Below, one piece after another: positions 19,920-52,049 of a DNA stretch of 64,000 nucleotides. Position numbers and translations under genes: made by a program. How positions within the stretch are numbered: the stretch's first letter is position 1; every line of letters begins with the position of its first letter. Source of the DNA: Calcarisporiella thermophila CBS 279.70 (taxonomy: Eukaryota > Fungi > Calcarisporiellomycota); contig NW_027192210.1 of the NCBI RefSeq assembly GCF_041956535.1, positions 504,021-568,020 on the forward strand. Direction: 5' to 3'. The notes under the pieces are model-generated. The model did not search any database. It saw nothing but the letters and a program-made list of their open reading frames with translations, and was not told where the DNA came from.

Positions 19920-21699
19920 CTAGAGGGCTAAATCCCTTAGAAATTGGCGCATCTCCTGAAGTTCTTCAATTCCAGACTCATCAAGCACGTGTTGATATTT
20001 GGCGAGTGTCTCTTCAACTTCTGCTAGCGCTTCCGAGTGCTGTCCACTGAAAGGAATCAAGAGGGGGTCGTAAATAGATTGGATAATGAGCAGAAAAAGC
20101 AAAATAAAATCACCTATTAAAGAGCAACGAGCATAGCTTGATCTTTTCGTTCGCAAGCTCCACTCCTTCTCCATATACCCTCTGCACAATCTCTAAGGAT
20201 TTCCTGCATTTTTCCACTGCTTGGGTATATTGCCCCATATATGCTAGCACTTGTGCCATTCTGTCATAAGTCATACCGATTAGCCGGCACTGCGGGTGGT
20301 ATACACGCAATTGAACCTCAAGAAGTTTATTCAATTTTGACATGGCAGGATCAAAGGAAATATCCTGGATCAGTGATTGAATTTGGTGCATAAGAGCCTG
20401 TCTTTGAACAAGATTTACGGGCGTGGCACAACGGGAGCAGAGGGCATCCTGTTCTGACAGAAAATTGGAACATGCGGAATCGGAGCAACGGTATACGTAT
20501 TCTAATGGATTTTGCTCACTATTTGTCGTTAGGAGAGCTTAGTAAGATTCAGATAAGCACATGAAAAGTACCTGTTTTGGCAAGATTCGCACTCGCAATC
20601 GAAGAAATAGTTCTCTCTTAATATTCTTTTACGCTGTTCGGTGCGCTGTTTTCCTACTAGTGGCCCATAACTGATACACACCGGCTCACCCTCTTTAACT
20701 TCCCGTGCCACTATCACTTTCAACACGAGAGAGTTCTCCACATGCTCAAACTTGACTATGGAATTTGGACTACAATCATGGTTTATCCGACTCGCTACCA
20801 GATAAAGCCCCAGCCCGATCGAGGTAGAAGTGAATTCGACGGTGTTTCCTTCTCGAACCACGGTAGATTCAGATTTATCCCCTTGGATTTTGAAGGCATT
20901 GCATCTGACTTTGGCAAGCATGTGCATGAGCTCCAGAAGAGCCTCGTCGGGAAGTCCAAAGGTGATTGCGAGGATAGAAGCAGTTATTGCATATTGGGAA
21001 ACTAGGGCAGGAGGCTGCGCATCCAAGTGGTGGACAAGTGTGTTAAACCCGTATTTATCTGCAACAAAAATGTTAGCATAAGTTTGGTTACTTTCAAGAA
21101 AGGGCGACCAGCTGTTATATATTGGGTCATTTACCATTCAAATAATCAGGAGCACCATGCTTCTGCATAAAGTATGCCTTTACAGCCATTTCGGTAATCT
21201 CTCCAAATTTCGCTGATAAACCTTTAAGTCCGCATACAAATCTGTGTCCTCCACGGTCATTGTCGAAACACTCTTTTCCACAAAACCATACTTCATTGCA
21301 TTCTGCACATTTGATTCGTTTGACATCCTTATCGCCCAGCACAGCAAGACACGCTTCGCACCGCGCATTTTTCAATTCTAATTTTAACGCATGCGTAAAA
21401 GGTAATTCTTCGAGCACAACTGCACCAGCAGAAAGACTCCGGGTAGCAACAAGATAATTCCCTGCCTTTGAGGAAGACGTGAGAGTCATATCTCGGGGAG
21501 GTGTAAAGATGTCATTTGGTCGAGTTAGAGGTTGAGAGATACGACGACGCGCTGGAGCATTTGACCATTCAGAGAGAAAGGATCGCAATGAAGGAGATTT
21601 CTGTACATAGGCACGTACACGTGCTCGTTCCTGTGCAGATTCAGCGAAGTTTGGATTAATTCTGAGAGAGTCAAACCATTCTGTACGCAACAGAGACAT
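19920..21699 (-). CDS. SET and MYND domain (SMYD) lysine methyltransferase; multi-exon
   Basis: MYND CEAC...CAECNEVWFCGKEC...H...C; SET VRCNAF, GLYLVASRINHDCSPN, ISYG; post-SET YFFDCECESC; TPR-like C-terminus. Confidence 0.92.
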
Positions 21700-21838
21700 T
21701 TATTGTTATATTTTGTGGTCTTCCTTTGGACCTGAGTGTCCTGCCGTAATTATAAATGGTGGCGCAGCCAAAATATTAGCAGGTTCTAATTTAATGATAG
21801 ACTAGCATAGGCAGTTTCAATAGGCAGGACTAATCATC

Positions 21839-22971
21839 ATGGTGCTCTATTTCACAAGCAATGGTATGCATAGCGCTCTGAAATACTTTTATTCAGTTGA
21901 TTAATAGTAACTGTTGTTTCTTCTTTAGTTGTCGATCCTCCGGCAACGATCTATATGGGAAAAGACAAATATGAGAGTAAGTGGAAATTTCTAGACTATG
22001 ATTTTTTTTCATAAAAGTTAACTCATGTACATTAGATGAAGAATTGATTAAATATGGATTTGACGAAGACGTATGGTAAGACCAACTTTTTTGGCTTTTC
22101 CTTACATTAAGAAATTTAACCCAGACGCGTGCTTTTGCTTTGTTTTGTGCCTCTATGCATTTTAAATTGCAACTTAGGGTAAGTCAGAACCTTCCATTCT
22201 AACTGACTATTTTCGAATTTATAACTGTTCAAAATACGACTAGTTTCACGTAGACAAACTGTCGAGTGCACACGTATATCTTCGTCTTCGTGAGGGTGAA
22301 TCATGGGAGGATATTCCAAAAGCAGTACTCAATGATCTCGCACAGCTGGTGAAAGCCAACAGTATTGAGGGTGAGCTATTTCGCCCCCTTATTAGATTTT
22401 CCGTCAGAGTATTGATATATAATCGCAATGCTCAGGGAATAAAAAGAATAACATCACTGTGATATACACTCCTTGGAGCAATTTGAAGAAGACCGGAGAC
22501 ATGGATGTTGGCCAAGTGTCTTTCCATAACCCTAAGCTTGTGAGTACATATTCTTATTTCTTTGCTATTTTTCCCTCATGTAACCGAATCTGGCTTTTGA
22601 AAGGTGAAACGGGTATTTATCGAGAAGCGTGTCAACGAAATCGTGAACAGGCTCAATAAAACTAAACAGGAGAGATACCCTGACTTGTATGCAGAACGCC
22701 TGGAGCGAGATAAACTAAAGAGAAGAGACGCGCGGATTGCACTGAACAAGCAGGTGTGTAAACTTTGATAATTGGGTTCACACTTTCAAGGTCACCTTGC
22801 TCATGATTTATCACTTCAAAACAGCGCCAAGAAGAGCTTGCGGTCAAAAGAGAACGGGATGCAGCCAAGGCCAATTCACTTGAAAACCTGTTCGATATTA
22901 CCAATATGAAGACTAACCGGCGCGTAGACGATGATGACGGGGACGTCGTCGATGAAGATGACTTCATGTGA
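21839..22971 (+). CDS. CCDC25: CCDC25/Jlp2 (NFACT-R domain) protein; includes a 1-nt exon at 22178
   Basis: [81 protein letters not shown], acidic DEDDFM end. Confidence 0.95.
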
Positions 22972-23720
22972 TTCAAAAGCCATGCAGAGGAATTGGCAAT
23001 CTACATAAGCCGACAAGGCTTCATTTTTTGTGTATATTTGGGGATAATAGAATTGAGAGTTGAGAATTGGCGAGGATAAATAAGGATGCATCTTGGTTAC
23101 TATTTTGGCCCATTGTTCGAATCCGAGAGCTTTCTTTTTAGTGTATTCTAAACTGAGAATTTCACCTTCGCATCAGTATTTTTCTCGTGCTAACGCGAGG
23201 ATCCTTGATGCAGACTGCATTCCAGTGACCGCTGTCAAAAATTTAATTAGACGATGGAAAAATTCGCTCTCAGAGCGGGCATTTTTGGAAAAGATCCCCC
23301 AGAAATTGGTACTAGATTACGGAAAATTGAGACTAAGTCGCGCTGCTATGCGCACGGTTGTTGTCAAGTCCCATTATATAAGGTTTTGCCCGACTCTACG
23401 TTCCTGCAATAACGAAATCTCTTTTGAAAAGCTTCCCTCTCTTTATTGAGTGCCCCTTCTATAAAACCGATCTCTACATCCTTTTATCATCTCGAAGTCC
23501 TTTCTTCCTGGGAAGAGAAGAAGAATACCCCCATTATTCCTCCTTCATTACCTATCTCTACTGTAAGAACCACCCTCATTGCTCGTCTTTAAAGCTAAAT
23601 ATCTTCAGGAGCTGAGCTCTTGTCTTTATATTCTACAATACTATACAATTTCCTCTATATCCTTATACGTTCTTTTGCTATATTTCCTATCTTTACAAAA
23701 GTTTTTGTTTGATTGATATC

Positions 23721-49841: not shown

Positions 49842-52049
49842 ATGTTCCGATTATATCCACGCACGTTTCCCCTGTCATCTTCCCGAACATTATTAAGGCG
49901 ATATGCAGGTACAACAAAACACATCATCAGATCTAAGCAATCCCCTTCCACATCTCCCTCCACATCCCCTTCATCCTTCACACCCATCTACTCTCGCCAT
50001 TACCAGCCCACTACAGACGAAGTCCGCTCGTTTCTAGATAGGCATCAACAGTTTCCCCGGCCGCTGAAAGGGACGACAGAGGAGGCACTCGTTCCGTGTC
50101 CACACTGCCCGCCAAAGCCGCGAGCAAGTCGATATACAGCTCGCATCCATCTTCGAACAGGACAATACCAGTGTCCATCCTGTTTATCACGCGGAACTTG
50201 GAGCGATTTTGTGAGTGCCGTGGCAAAGCCTTCGTTCGCCATTCTTGATGCCACATTGAAAGATGCGGGAGGTCAAAGAGGTGCTGGTAATGAGATAAGT
50301 TTCTCTAGGCCGATCTCTGAGATTGAAGCATACCCTGAACAGCTAAATGAGTATCCGGCTGTACGGGACTGGATGATCGAGATCGGGATTAGGGAAGAAA
50401 CACTGCAAAAATTTGGTGTTGGAGTGGCGAAGTATGCGTCACTGGAGACGAAGTTGGCTGCACATGGAAAGGAGCTAGAGGCCCAAATAGAAGGGGAAAT
50501 ATGTGTCACATTTCCAATGATGGGTCCGGATTTCGGCAAGTCCAATAATGAAAAGGCCGCCACCGACAATACCAAGCCAGCCGAAGATGCGGCGAAGCCT
50601 GCAGAAACAGATCTCGCCACCATCGAGTATCGAACTGTACGCATCAAAGCGGTCCGTCCGGGAACATCTGAGCTCATCGCTTTTGACCCCGCCACTCGAG
50701 CTAAATCTGACGTCCCTTGTCTGTTTGGATACCATTTACTGCACCCAAACACAGAGGAGATCATCCTTACTGCCAATGAGCTTGACTGCATGGCGGCGTT
50801 CCAGGAAACTCGCGTGCCTTCCGTCTCGCTTCCGAGCTTAAACCAGCTGCCCGTCGAGGTCGTGCCGCTTCTAGAGCGCTTCTCCAAGATCTACTTGTGG
50901 CTCGAGGACGATGTGAATGGGAGATCTGCTGCGGAAAAATTTGTGAGGAAATTGGGTATACACAGGTGTCGCATCGTGAGTACCCGGGGAGATTCGATTG
51001 ACGGACCCCGAAGCGCACACGAGGCCTTGGCTCGCGGAAGCAACCTACGGAAACTGTTATCCGAAGCGAAGCCGCTGGGCCATGATCAAATCATCGACTT
51101 TTCGGACCTCCGTGACGCTGTCTACAGAGAAGTGTTGCACCCGGACCAAGTGTGCGGCACTCCTTTCCGCGATTTTCCCGCACTCACGAATCTCCTTAAA
51201 GGGCATCGGCCCGGCGAGCTGACCGTGTTCACGGGGCGAACGGGCATAGGAAAGACAACCACGCTTTGCCAGCTCTCGCTTGATATTGCTCGACAAGGGA
51301 TCCCGACCCTGTGGGGTAGCTTCGAGATACCCAACGTACGGCTGGCGAAGAAGCTGCTGATGCAGTTGGCGGAGCGCGATTTATCGACCGTGCCGGAGGA
51401 GTTTGACGTATGGGCCAATGAACTCCAGAGAGTAAGGATAGGGCGATGCTTCACTAGGATTAGATGGAACACAGTTCAACTCTAACAATTCAACTCCTTC
51501 ACACCCCATAGATACCAATGTATTTTCTCCGATTTTTCGGAAGCACCGATATCAATACTGTCGAAGAGGCCATGCTCCACGCCCTCCATGCCTACGATGT
51601 CCAGCACGTTCTGATTGATAATCTCCAATTCATGTTGTCTGGTCAACGGCACTCCTCACTCGAGCGGTGGGAGCTTCAGGATGAGGTGCTCGCGCGGTTC
51701 CGCCAGTTTGCCACCCAGCAAAATGTCCACGTCACTCTGGTAGTGCACCCAAGAAAGGATGAGAATCCTGCGCTGAGCGTGAACAGCATATTCGGAAGCG
51801 CCAAGGTCACCCAGGAGGCTGATAATGTGGTCGTGATCCAGCAGGGAGAGAAGGGGGTCCGCTACTTGGAGGTGTTGAAGAACCGATTTGATGGAACGCT
51901 TGGCCGGGTGCCTTTTGTATTCGATCGAGAAAGTCTGAAGGTAAATGGGAATAAAAAATACGCCGCGGCACTCAGAATCAAACCTGGACTAACCGCTTTC
52001 TCGTCTTTAATAGATACGTGAAATTAGGGACGATAAAATCAAATATTAG
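49842..52049 (+). CDS. TWNK: Twinkle mitochondrial replicative DNA helicase (T7 gp4-like); 3 exons
   Basis: Mitochondrial presequence; CPHC...CPSC; TOPRIM-like region; LKGHRPGELTVFTGRTGIGKTT, TLWGSFEIPN, HVLIDNLQFM, HVTLVVHPRK, SIFGSAKVTQEADNV, KNRFDGTLG. Confidence 0.95.

What the first reader, a model, noticed from the sequence alone, without database searches (positions are those of the whole stretch)
22076..22243. One-nucleotide exon (G at 22178) required in CCDC25/JLP2
Seen: the upstream exon ends ...GAC GTA TG|gtaaga (donor 22076) and the downstream exon starts ctag|TTT CAC GTA GAC (22244). The conserved DVWFHVD needs one more G. Inside the gap is acttag|G|gtaagt, an acceptor and a consensus donor flanking a single G. 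Two introns (22076-22177 and 22179-22243) restore TGG, whereas a single intron frameshifts the gene. Established: 1-nt exons are very rare. Inference: splicing is ordered (twin-intron-like), and skipping could act as an NMD switch.
Basis: seen in the sequence. Interest (0 to 1): 0.8.

Follow-up and report, generated by a model that had tools for sequence, protein, structure and literature searches.

The report
Conserved one-nucleotide exon in fungal CCDC25
The CCDC25/JLP2 gene of this fungus (Calcarisporiella thermophila) almost certainly contains a real exon only one base long (G at 22178), and the same tiny exon sits at the same place in many distantly related fungi, where it has caused widespread wrong gene models in public databases.

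Summary
Exon 3 ends GAC GTA TG (22075). Intron A is 22076-22177 (gtaaga..cttag), the exon is G22178, intron B is 22179-22243 (gtaagt..actag), and exon 5 starts TTT CAC at 22244.

- **Only solution:** among GT/GC-AG combinations, the two-intron model alone restores the conserved Trp of DVWFHVD. One intron (22076-22243) gives a stop after three codons. The only other in-frame option (donor GTATGG at 22071) deletes Val-Trp.
- **No RNA for this species:** no sequencing run was listed.
- **Comparative evidence:** all 32 distinct orthologous loci that read TG|GT...AG|TTY have exactly one internal AG|G|GT with both halves at least 40 nt (about 1 expected by chance). Donor B, acceptor A and branch-site motifs show real splice-site features.
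- **RNA in an orthologue:** a Hypoxylon argillaceum transcript contig reads GTATGGTTCCAC over a genome with the same layout.
- **Evolution:** a chytrid and animals carry only intron A's position. Some Dothideomycete-like loci carry only intron B. Others carry neither.
- **Annotation:** 68 of 120 annotated Pezizomycotina proteins lack the Val-Trp.

This is a new, unusually deeply conserved member of a known kind (Arabidopsis APC11, Fusarium CYP621A, Coprinopsis). Ordered splicing is plausible but untested, and nothing supports an NMD switch. The scan's first-stage notes list other microexons in this genome (unchecked).

The parts
21839..22971 (+). CCDC25/JLP2 (NFACT-R_1) gene. CDS in 8 exons: 21839-21863, 21929-21976, 22036-22075, 22178, 22244-22370, 22436-22539, 22604-22753, 22825-22968, plus TGA at 22969-71.
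   Evidence: tblastn of Actinomortierella CCDC25 (P0413) and P0390 against the window covers the orthologue from residue 1 to about 215 exon by exon. The other introns are 65, 59, 65, 64 and 71 nt.
22036..22075 (+). Exon 3. It ends ..GAC GTA TG, so it supplies the first two bases of the Trp codon.
   Evidence: The orthologue alignment ends at ..DEDV(W), and residue 39 resumes at 22244.
22071..22076 (+). Alternative in-frame donor GTATGG, made of the Val codon plus TGG. Used with the acceptor at 22243 it would delete Val-Trp. This is the solution chosen by many automatic gene models in other fungi.
   Evidence: In one search, 68 of 120 annotated orthologues read ..D[ED]|FH[VA]D with no VW.
22076..22177 (+). 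Intron A, 102 nt, phase 2 inside the Trp codon. Donor gtaaga, acceptor cttag.
   Evidence: Its position is shared with the single intron of a chytrid (L096) and of animal-type loci (L090-92).
22115..22120 (+). Candidate branch site of intron A: TTTAAC, with the branch A at 22119, 58 nt before the acceptor. A pyrimidine-rich tract follows. There is no usable AG before 22176-77, because the CAG at 22122-24 is only 5 nt away.
   Evidence: Sequence inspection. One search found no YTRAY in the last 45 nt of the window's intron A, so this assignment is weak.
22178..22178 (+). The one-nucleotide exon G, third base of the Trp codon (TG + G).
   Evidence: 32 of 32 orthologous loci; the orthologue's transcript contains the G.
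22179..22243 (+). Intron B, 65 nt, phase 0 between Trp and Phe. Donor gtaagt, acceptor actag.
   Evidence: Its length equals the gene's typical intron length. Loci L028, L030, L043 and L045 keep only this position, as TGG|GTAYG..AG|TTY.
22199..22207 (+). Candidate branch sites of intron B: CTAAC and CTGAC, with branch As at 22202 and 22206 (41 and 37 nt before the acceptor). A further ATAAC lies at 22221-25.
22244..22370 (+). Exon 5, [18 protein letters not shown](G), the core of the NFACT-R_1 domain.

Best explanation
G22178 is a genuine, constitutively used one-nucleotide exon of the CCDC25/JLP2 gene of Calcarisporiella thermophila. Two complete, canonical U2-type GT-AG introns lie one base apart: A (22076-22177, phase 2 inside the Trp codon) and B (22179-22243, phase 0 after it).

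The introns are most likely recognised by intron definition and removed one after the other, because the acceptor of A and the donor of B overlap physically. Either order works. If A goes first, TGG|GTAAGT is formed. If B goes first, cttAG|G TTT is formed. The mRNA then reads GAC GTA TGG TTT CAC (D V W F H).

Shown: the anatomy, its uniqueness as a solution, its conservation across fungi, and the mRNA junction in an orthologue. Inferred: that this species' mRNA carries the junction, and the sequential order of splicing.

Evolutionary reading (inferred): intron A occupies an old opisthokont position (animals, a chytrid). Intron B was added one base downstream in a fungal ancestor. Later lineages lost both introns or only A.
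For: **Uniqueness.** Among GT/GC-AG combinations only the 1-nt exon restores the invariant Trp without a stop. Orthologue residues 38 and 39 abut exactly at 22076 and 22244.

**Conservation.** I drew 80 metagenome loci without regard to intron structure and added loci from NCBI, JGI, ENA and Logan. All 32 distinct loci that read TG|GT...AG|TTY have exactly one internal AG|G|GT with both halves at least 40 nt. Chance gives about 3% per locus, 0.97 expected in total, and a product of p of about 3e-55. The intron sequences are otherwise unrelated between loci.

**Features the search did not require.**
- Donor B has G at +5 in 29 of 32 loci and A or G at +3 in 29 of 32.
- Acceptor A has C or T at -3 in 28 of 32 and never G.
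- CTRAY branch motifs lie 6-45 nt before the acceptor in 20 of 32 introns A and 17 of 32 introns B, against about 5 expected.
- Median lengths are 58.5 and 58 nt, each a normal fungal intron.

**RNA.** The Hypoxylon argillaceum genome (L093) has TG|GTGAGT..110 nt..GTCAG|G|GTATGA..90 nt..AACAG|TTC. An intronless Logan contig from SRR10915310 (L094) is 100% identical to the exons and reads GACGTATGGTTCCACG. The five Logan-only orthologues listed all carry the Trp.

**The gene is otherwise intact.** All exons are conserved through to the C-terminal DEDDFM, and the locus is single-copy in the 28.2-Mb assembly.
Against: - No RNA data for this species: the look-up of sequencing runs listed no run, so the junction GACGTATGGTTTCACG is not observed here.
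- A cDNA cannot tell which G is retained (the donor's first G, the internal G or the acceptor's last G). The choice of the internal G rests on canonical splice rules and on conservation.
- The window's intron A has no good branch motif in its last 45 nt. The best candidate, TTTAAC, lies 58 nt upstream.
- No splicing intermediate or lariat was seen in any species.
- The most similar orthologue over exon 5 that I found (L003, 86% over exon 5) has no intron at this site.
Confidence: 0.88

Rival explanations
1. One intron with a non-canonical end is removed, either 22077-22243 (TA..AG) or 22076-22242 (GT..TA). This would give the same TGG TTT mRNA without any internal exon.
For: The mRNA sequence would be identical. 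The BLAST alignment of the Hypoxylon cDNA to its genome is ambiguous by exactly these bases. Genomic TG+G22076 already reads TGG in tblastn.
Against: No known spliceosome uses TA-AG or GT-TA, and neither donor resembles a U12-type site (gtaaga, gtaagt). This model predicts no constraint on the intron interior. Yet 32 of 32 loci keep one AG|G|GT with donor-like and acceptor-like flanks and a branch motif before the internal AG. The total length is about twice a normal intron.
Confidence: 0.04
2. The main mRNA uses the in-frame donor GTATGG at 22071 with the acceptor at 22243, giving a protein without Val-Trp, as in most GenBank models of the orthologues. Under this reading the internal AG|G|GT is unused.
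For: This is a canonical GT-AG intron of 173 nt that keeps the frame. 68 of 120 annotated orthologues are modelled this way.
Against: Those models are automatic predictions. Transcript-derived proteins (the five Logan-only entries) and the Hypoxylon transcript contig contain the Trp. The Val codon plus TG is conserved in all 32 loci, although it would be intronic under this model. [VI]W precedes FH[VA]D wherever the N-terminal part is read contiguously, from animals to fungi. This product may still exist as a minor isoform.
Confidence: 0.04
3. Assembly error or pseudogene: one G is missing from GTATGG|gtaaga (true sequence TGGGTAAGA), or the gene is frameshifted and dead.
For: TGG against TGGG is a homopolymer-type difference. 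A few fungal loci do read TGG|GTAYG with a single 62-64-nt intron (L028, L030, L043, L045).
Against: The same 'missing' G occurs in 31 other independent assemblies from four data sources, always together with the internal AG|G|GT. With an extra G the window's single intron would be 168 nt, against 59-71 nt for the gene's other introns. All other exons are intact and conserved.
Confidence: 0.02
4. The microexon is a regulated switch: skipping it (donor 22076 to acceptor 22243) yields a transcript with a stop three codons downstream, which is degraded by NMD and so tunes CCDC25 levels.
For: The skipped product reads GAC GTA TGT TTC ACG TAG, so it would be a plausible NMD substrate. In an artificial plant construct with a 1-nt exon, a third of the transcripts skipped it, according to the discussion in PMC4674806.
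Against: No isoform data of any kind. Conservation over very long times in a housekeeping-type gene is equally expected for a constitutive exon. Many lineages lost the introns altogether with no sign of a substitute.
Confidence: 0.1

Closest known systems
One-nucleotide exon of Fusarium CYP621A P450 genes (Nelson and Syed 2026, PMC12940212)
   Same: It is a fungal nuclear gene with the identical AG|G|GT core. The exon supplies one base of a codon in an invariant motif. It was detected because the flanking exons are out of phase, is conserved among orthologues, was confirmed by SRA reads, and is missed by annotation pipelines.
   Different: The gene and codon position differ (middle base of a Gly codon). 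That case is known from one genus (20 orthologues named in the Results). The CCDC25 exon is found in five classes of Pezizomycotina, in Calcarisporiella (Mucoromycota in the broad sense) and in a Mortierella-like metagenome lineage. Here the two flanking intron positions can each be traced separately in other lineages.
Single-nucleotide exon of Arabidopsis APC11 (Guo and Liu 2015, PMC4674806)
   Same: A constitutive 1-nt exon between two canonical introns. The authors also propose intron definition with one-after-the-other removal.
   Different: It is in a plant, the exon is an A, and it was validated by mutagenesis and reporter assays, which are lacking here. Both rice paralogues lack an intron altogether.
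One-nucleotide exons in the long-read annotation of Coprinopsis cinerea (PMC12230235)
   Same: That work shows that fungal spliceosomes handle such exons: 13 exons of 1 nt, 57 of 2 nt and 27 of 3 nt, supported by long reads. Omitting them breaks gene models.
   Different: It is a genome-wide count in a basidiomycete. The text I read does not say which genes are involved or how conserved the exons are.
[D1,2]/[A2,3] stwintrons and the one-nucleotide intron shift (Fekete et al. 2017, PMC5587772)
   Same: Two consecutive U2-type splicing reactions by intron definition in fungi. A single G sits at the junction of two intronic units. Orthologues carry discordant canonical introns one nucleotide apart, in phase 2 and phase 0, as seen here.
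   Different: In a stwintron the internal intron interrupts a splice signal of the external one, and no base between them stays in the mRNA. Here both introns are complete on their own and the G is exonic. If this layout mediated an intron shift, the intermediate would be a 1-nt exon, not an alternatively spliced stwintron.
Recursive splicing at zero-nucleotide ratchet points (AG|GTAAGT) in Drosophila
   Same: An acceptor is placed directly against a donor, and the donor is used after the upstream part has been joined. This comes from my own knowledge and from the papers cited in PMC4674806.
   Different: Ratchet points keep no nucleotide and subdivide very long introns. Here one base is kept and both introns are short.

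Membership tests
One-nucleotide exon between two canonical U2-type introns | The flanking exons, aligned to intron-less or spliced orthologues, lack exactly one base. | tested here: met
   Orthologue residue 38 (Trp) has only TG in exon 3, and residue 39 starts at 22244. Intron-less orthologues read GTN TGG TTY (L003, L095, L097).
One-nucleotide exon between two canonical U2-type introns | An internal AG|N|GT supplies the required base, and each flanking intron is of viable length. | tested here: met
   cttAG|G|GTaagt at 22176-22180, with introns of 102 and 65 nt. It is the only stop-free solution.
One-nucleotide exon between two canonical U2-type introns | Each intron has its own branch site. 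| tested here: inconclusive
   The window's intron B has CTAAC and CTGAC 41 and 37 nt before the acceptor. Intron A has only TTTAAC, 58 nt upstream. Across orthologues both introns are enriched for CTRAY (20 of 32 and 17 of 32, against about 5 expected).
One-nucleotide exon between two canonical U2-type introns | The mature mRNA contains the base. | not testable with these tools
   No run was listed for this species. The feature is met in the orthologue Hypoxylon argillaceum, where the transcript contig L094 can be compared with the genome L093.
One-nucleotide exon between two canonical U2-type introns | The layout is conserved in orthologues beyond chance. | tested here: met
   32 of 32 distinct loci, 0.97 expected.
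Stwintron (spliceosomal twin intron) | An internal intron interrupts the donor, branch site or acceptor of an external intron, so that the external signal exists only after the first splicing (definition in PMC5587772). | tested here: not met
   Both introns have intact GT and AG ends in the genome. After G22076 comes TA, not GT, so [D1,2] is impossible. 22177-78 is GG, so [A2,3] is impossible. The G between them is exonic.
U12-type (minor spliceosome) intron | A donor of the type RTATCCTT, or AT-AC ends. | tested here: not met
   The donors are gtaaga and gtaagt. The criterion itself comes from my own knowledge.
CCDC25 / Jlp2 (NFACT-R_1 domain protein) | A Pfam NFACT-R_1 domain above the curated cut-off, and full-length collinearity with named CCDC25 proteins of about 210 aa. 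| tested here: met
   Exon 5 scores 39.4 bits and exon 6 scores 31.2 bits, against a cut-off of 29.8. Actinomortierella 'Coiled-coil domain-containing protein 25' (P0413) aligns over all exons, with 79-89% identity in the domain exons.

The most novel reading that the evidence does not exclude
The G exon is an ancient, stably maintained intermediate of a one-nucleotide intron shift. The phase-2 intron inside the Trp codon is ancestral to opisthokonts (animals, a chytrid). A second intron was gained one base downstream before Mucoromycota and Dikarya separated. Loss of the upstream intron alone then produced the phase-0 intron seen in some Dothideomycete-like lineages. This would be a route to intron 'sliding' that needs no stwintron and never changes the mRNA, and it would make this by far the oldest known one-nucleotide exon.
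Probability: 0.45. Interest if true: 0.7.

Novelty: new member of a known kind. Interest (0 to 1): 0.6.

Why it matters
- **Limits of the spliceosome.** One-nucleotide exons mark the lower limit of what the spliceosome can define, and very few have been described. This one appears to be conserved across fungal phyla. That argues such exons can be stable over very long times rather than short-lived accidents.
- **Annotation.** Most public Pezizomycotina CCDC25 models (68 of the 120 best matches) silently drop an invariant Val-Trp from the NFACT-R_1 domain. This is a systematic error that a simple rule could correct: out-of-phase exons plus an internal AG|G|GT.
- **Intron evolution.** Lineages with only the phase-2 intron, only the phase-0 intron, both or neither make this gene a natural test case for how introns come to lie one nucleotide apart.
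- **This genome.** First-stage notes suggest that C. thermophila has many microexons. If that holds, it would be a useful organism for studying how they are spliced.

Tried and rejected
- **RNA evidence for this species.** The look-up of sequencing runs on 21700-23100 listed no run, so read laying could not be used.
- **Same-species cDNA and genome pairs among the metagenome loci.** None found. The best pair was 92.5% identical, L040 against L045.
- **The species' own annotated protein.** The C. thermophila CCDC25 protein was not among the 120 best hits. How its annotators modelled the junction is therefore unknown.
- **Assembly error.** Rejected, because 31 other independent distinct loci show the same layout.
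- **Stwintron reading.** Rejected on the sequence (definition).
- **U12-type or GC-AG solutions.** None exists.
- **Larger microexons (4-67 nt) inside 22076-22243.** All contain stops or insert residues absent from every orthologue.
- **Origin of intron B by duplication of intron A.** There is no A-B similarity within loci (mean z 0.28; window z -0.8).
- **Literature.** I found no paper on introns of CCDC25/JLP2, and no stwintron title or abstract listed mentions this gene.
- All searches were exon by exon by reference, or used database proteins against the window. Mammal-like CCDC25 proteins in the hit list (for example P0094) were not followed to contigs. The one vertebrate locus fetched (L090) is not human-like in sequence, and I used only its acceptor.

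Full report
**1. What is in the window**

The + strand of 21839-22971 carries a gene in eight coding pieces.
- The exon translations are MVLYFTSN.., [15 protein letters not shown], [12 protein letters not shown] and [42 protein letters not shown]. Three more exons follow, ending in DEDDFM.
- Exons 5 and 6 match Pfam NFACT-R_1 above the curated cut-off.
- A named CCDC25 protein of Actinomortierella aligns exon by exon over its whole length.

- Exon 3 ends GAC GTA TG at 22075.
- gtaaga begins at 22076.
- cttAG|G|GTaagt places the single G at 22178.
- actAG ends at 22243, and TTT CAC GTA GAC starts at 22244.

**2. Is the one-base exon needed?**

I enumerated every GT or GC donor and AG acceptor around the gap.
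- The obvious single intron (22076-22243) shifts the frame and runs into TAG after three codons.
- Three single-intron choices keep the frame, and all delete conserved residues. The mildest uses the Val codon itself as donor (GTATGG at 22071) and removes Val-Trp.
- Among two-intron solutions with the outer sites fixed, seven of eight contain stop codons. The remaining one is the 1-nt exon, with introns of 102 and 65 nt. The gene's other introns measure 65, 59, 65, 64 and 71 nt.
- AGGGTAAGT occurs twice in both strands of the window, which gives about 0.0025 expected in a stretch of this size.

**3. RNA evidence for this organism**

None was available. No sequencing run was listed, so no reads could be laid. 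The locus is single-copy in the 28.2-Mb assembly.

**4. Organism**

A long ORF for a Twinkle-type helicase (49842-51482) is 98% identical to a protein of Calcarisporiella thermophila. The next best hits, at about 45%, are Glomeromycotina and Mucoromycotina. The window is therefore from C. thermophila or a very close strain, a Mucoromycota-grade fungus.

**5. Comparative evidence**

An exhaustive HMMER search with exon 5 alone returned many ORF fragments that read through the intron up to ..Q|FHVD. It also returned one full-length model (P0143, Variospora sp.) that reads GWDED|FHVD, without Val-Trp.

The DNA behind six such proteins showed the window's layout in every case: Val codon, TG|GT....AG|G|GT....AG|TTY CAY.

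For a sample taken without regard to intron structure, I scanned metagenome contigs with an alignment of exon-5 peptides and classified the 80 best loci together with the earlier ones.
- 41 loci have no intron at the site.
- 5 loci have one phase-0 intron, TGG|GTAYG..AG|TTY. Four of these measure 62-64 nt and one is doubtful.
- Every other resolvable locus shows the 1-nt-exon layout.

After removing near-duplicates, 32 of 32 loci with TG|GT...AG|TTY carry exactly one internal AG|G|GT with both halves at least 40 nt. Shuffling gives 3% per locus and 0.97 expected in total.

Features that the search did not demand also behave like real splice sites.
- Donor B has G at +5 in 29 of 32 loci.
- Acceptor A has a pyrimidine at -3 in 28 of 32 and never G.
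- CTRAY branch motifs precede both acceptors about four times more often than in shuffles.
- Median intron lengths are 58.5 and 58 nt.

The intron sequences are unrelated between loci, and A does not resemble B within loci.

**6. RNA evidence in an orthologue**

P0208 of Hypoxylon argillaceum is encoded both on a genome scaffold (L093) and on an intronless Logan contig of run SRR10915310 (L094).
- The contig matches the exons at 100% and reads GACGTATGGTTCCACG.
- The genome reads TG|GTGAGT..(110 nt)..GTCAG|G|GTATGA..(90 nt)..AACAG|TTC.

So the mRNA carries exactly one G between TG and TTC. A cDNA cannot show which of three genomic Gs it is. Only the internal G is compatible with GT-AG rules, and only that reading explains the conservation described in section 5.

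**7. Taxonomic spread and history**

I assigned metagenome loci by their best match to named proteins. I also took named models that lack Val-Trp as an indirect marker of the layout.

The layout occurs in:
- Pezizomycetes (Wilcoxina-like);
- Eurotiomycetes (Aspergillus-, Trichophyton- and Exophiala-like);
- Dothideomycetes (Phyllosticta-like);
- Sordariomycetes;
- Lecanoromycetes;
- C. thermophila;
- a Mortierella-like metagenome lineage (L005/L006).

Other lineages show other states.
- Actinomortierella and Coemansia have no intron there.
- The chytrid Entophlyctis has a single intron, TG|GTGAGT..ACAG|G TTY.
- A vertebrate locus and another animal-type locus show ..ttttccccAG|G TTC.

This shared position is that of intron A. 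The phase-0-only loci are Dothideomycete-like, and their nearest named relatives include taxa with the 1-nt layout.

The simplest reading is that A is old, that B was added one base downstream in an early fungal ancestor, and that later lineages lost both introns or A alone. This is inference. Independent gains of B cannot be excluded without a tree.

**8. Mechanism**

The acceptor of A and the donor of B overlap within the footprint of the factors that recognise them. Simultaneous assembly on both is therefore unlikely, and stepwise removal by intron definition is the natural model. The Arabidopsis authors proposed the same (PMC4674806).

Either order regenerates a usable site: TGG|GTAAGT if A goes first, cttAG|GTTT if B goes first. 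The layout is not a stwintron, because no signal is interrupted (definition in PMC5587772). It works like a recursive-splicing ratchet point that keeps one base.

Skipping the G would give a stop three codons later. Whether that ever happens or is regulated is untested.

**9. Consequences for databases**

Of the 120 best annotated relatives of the Variospora protein:
- 68 lack Val-Trp;
- 27 have the Trp, among them several JGI-type models and the five Logan-only, presumably transcript-derived, proteins;
- 25 are otherwise broken at this point.

Verticillium dahliae appears in both forms (211 and 213 aa).

**10. What is known**

One-nucleotide exons have been described in three places.
- Arabidopsis APC11 (PMC4674806).
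- Fusarium CYP621A, with the same AG|G|GT (PMC12940212). That paper calls itself the second example overall and the first in a fungus.
- Coprinopsis cinerea, as a count of 13 (PMC12230235).

I found nothing on CCDC25/JLP2. This is a new member of a known kind, notable for its depth of conservation and for the traceable history of its two introns.

**11. Limits**

- There is no RNA for this species, no intermediates and no lariats.
- Intron A of the window has a weak branch-site candidate.
- Taxon labels of metagenome loci are by best match only.
All searches used single exons by reference or database proteins.
- The first-stage notes of other microexons in this genome were not checked.

Noticed in passing
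window 49842-51485 (+): A long ORF for a Twinkle-type mitochondrial primase-helicase. It is 98% identical to Calcarisporiella thermophila VTP21DRAFT_5021, and the next best hits are Glomeromycotina at about 45%. This identifies the organism.
   Followed up: partly
L002:2021-2207 (Variospora sp., GCA_051942325.1): The next intron of the orthologue (after ..SIEG) is 187 nt long and contains ctAG|GTAAGT at 2149-2156. This is an acceptor set directly against a consensus donor with no base between them, like a zero-nucleotide recursive splice point, and it splits the intron into 130 + 57 nt. It may be chance.
   Followed up: no
other pieces of the same genome (first-stage notes s1-605900, s1-593843, s1-588371, s1-593991, s1-594115, s1-594271, s1-600635): First-stage readers report further microexons in this genome: 1-nt exons in APC11 (the gene with the Arabidopsis 1-nt exon) and Hsp78, exons of 2, 3, 4 and 5 nt in ras, RNR1, thiolase and DAG kinase, and an array of 3-nt exons. 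If real, C. thermophila is unusually rich in microexons.
   Followed up: no
public protein records (P0143, P0151-P0269): Verticillium dahliae has two deposited versions of this protein: 211 aa without Val-Trp (VdLs.17) and 213 aa with it. Many genera show only the truncated form.
   Followed up: partly
L096:499-635 (Entophlyctis helioformis): The chytrid's single intron at this site is largely a (GCATGTGT)n-like microsatellite.
   Followed up: no
window 20529-21699 (-): The neighbouring gene on the opposite strand looks like a SET/MYND-type protein, judged by eye from two long ORFs with a Cys-rich zinc-finger-like stretch and a SET-like C-terminal part. It lies head to head with CCDC25, about 140 nt from its start codon.
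   Followed up: no
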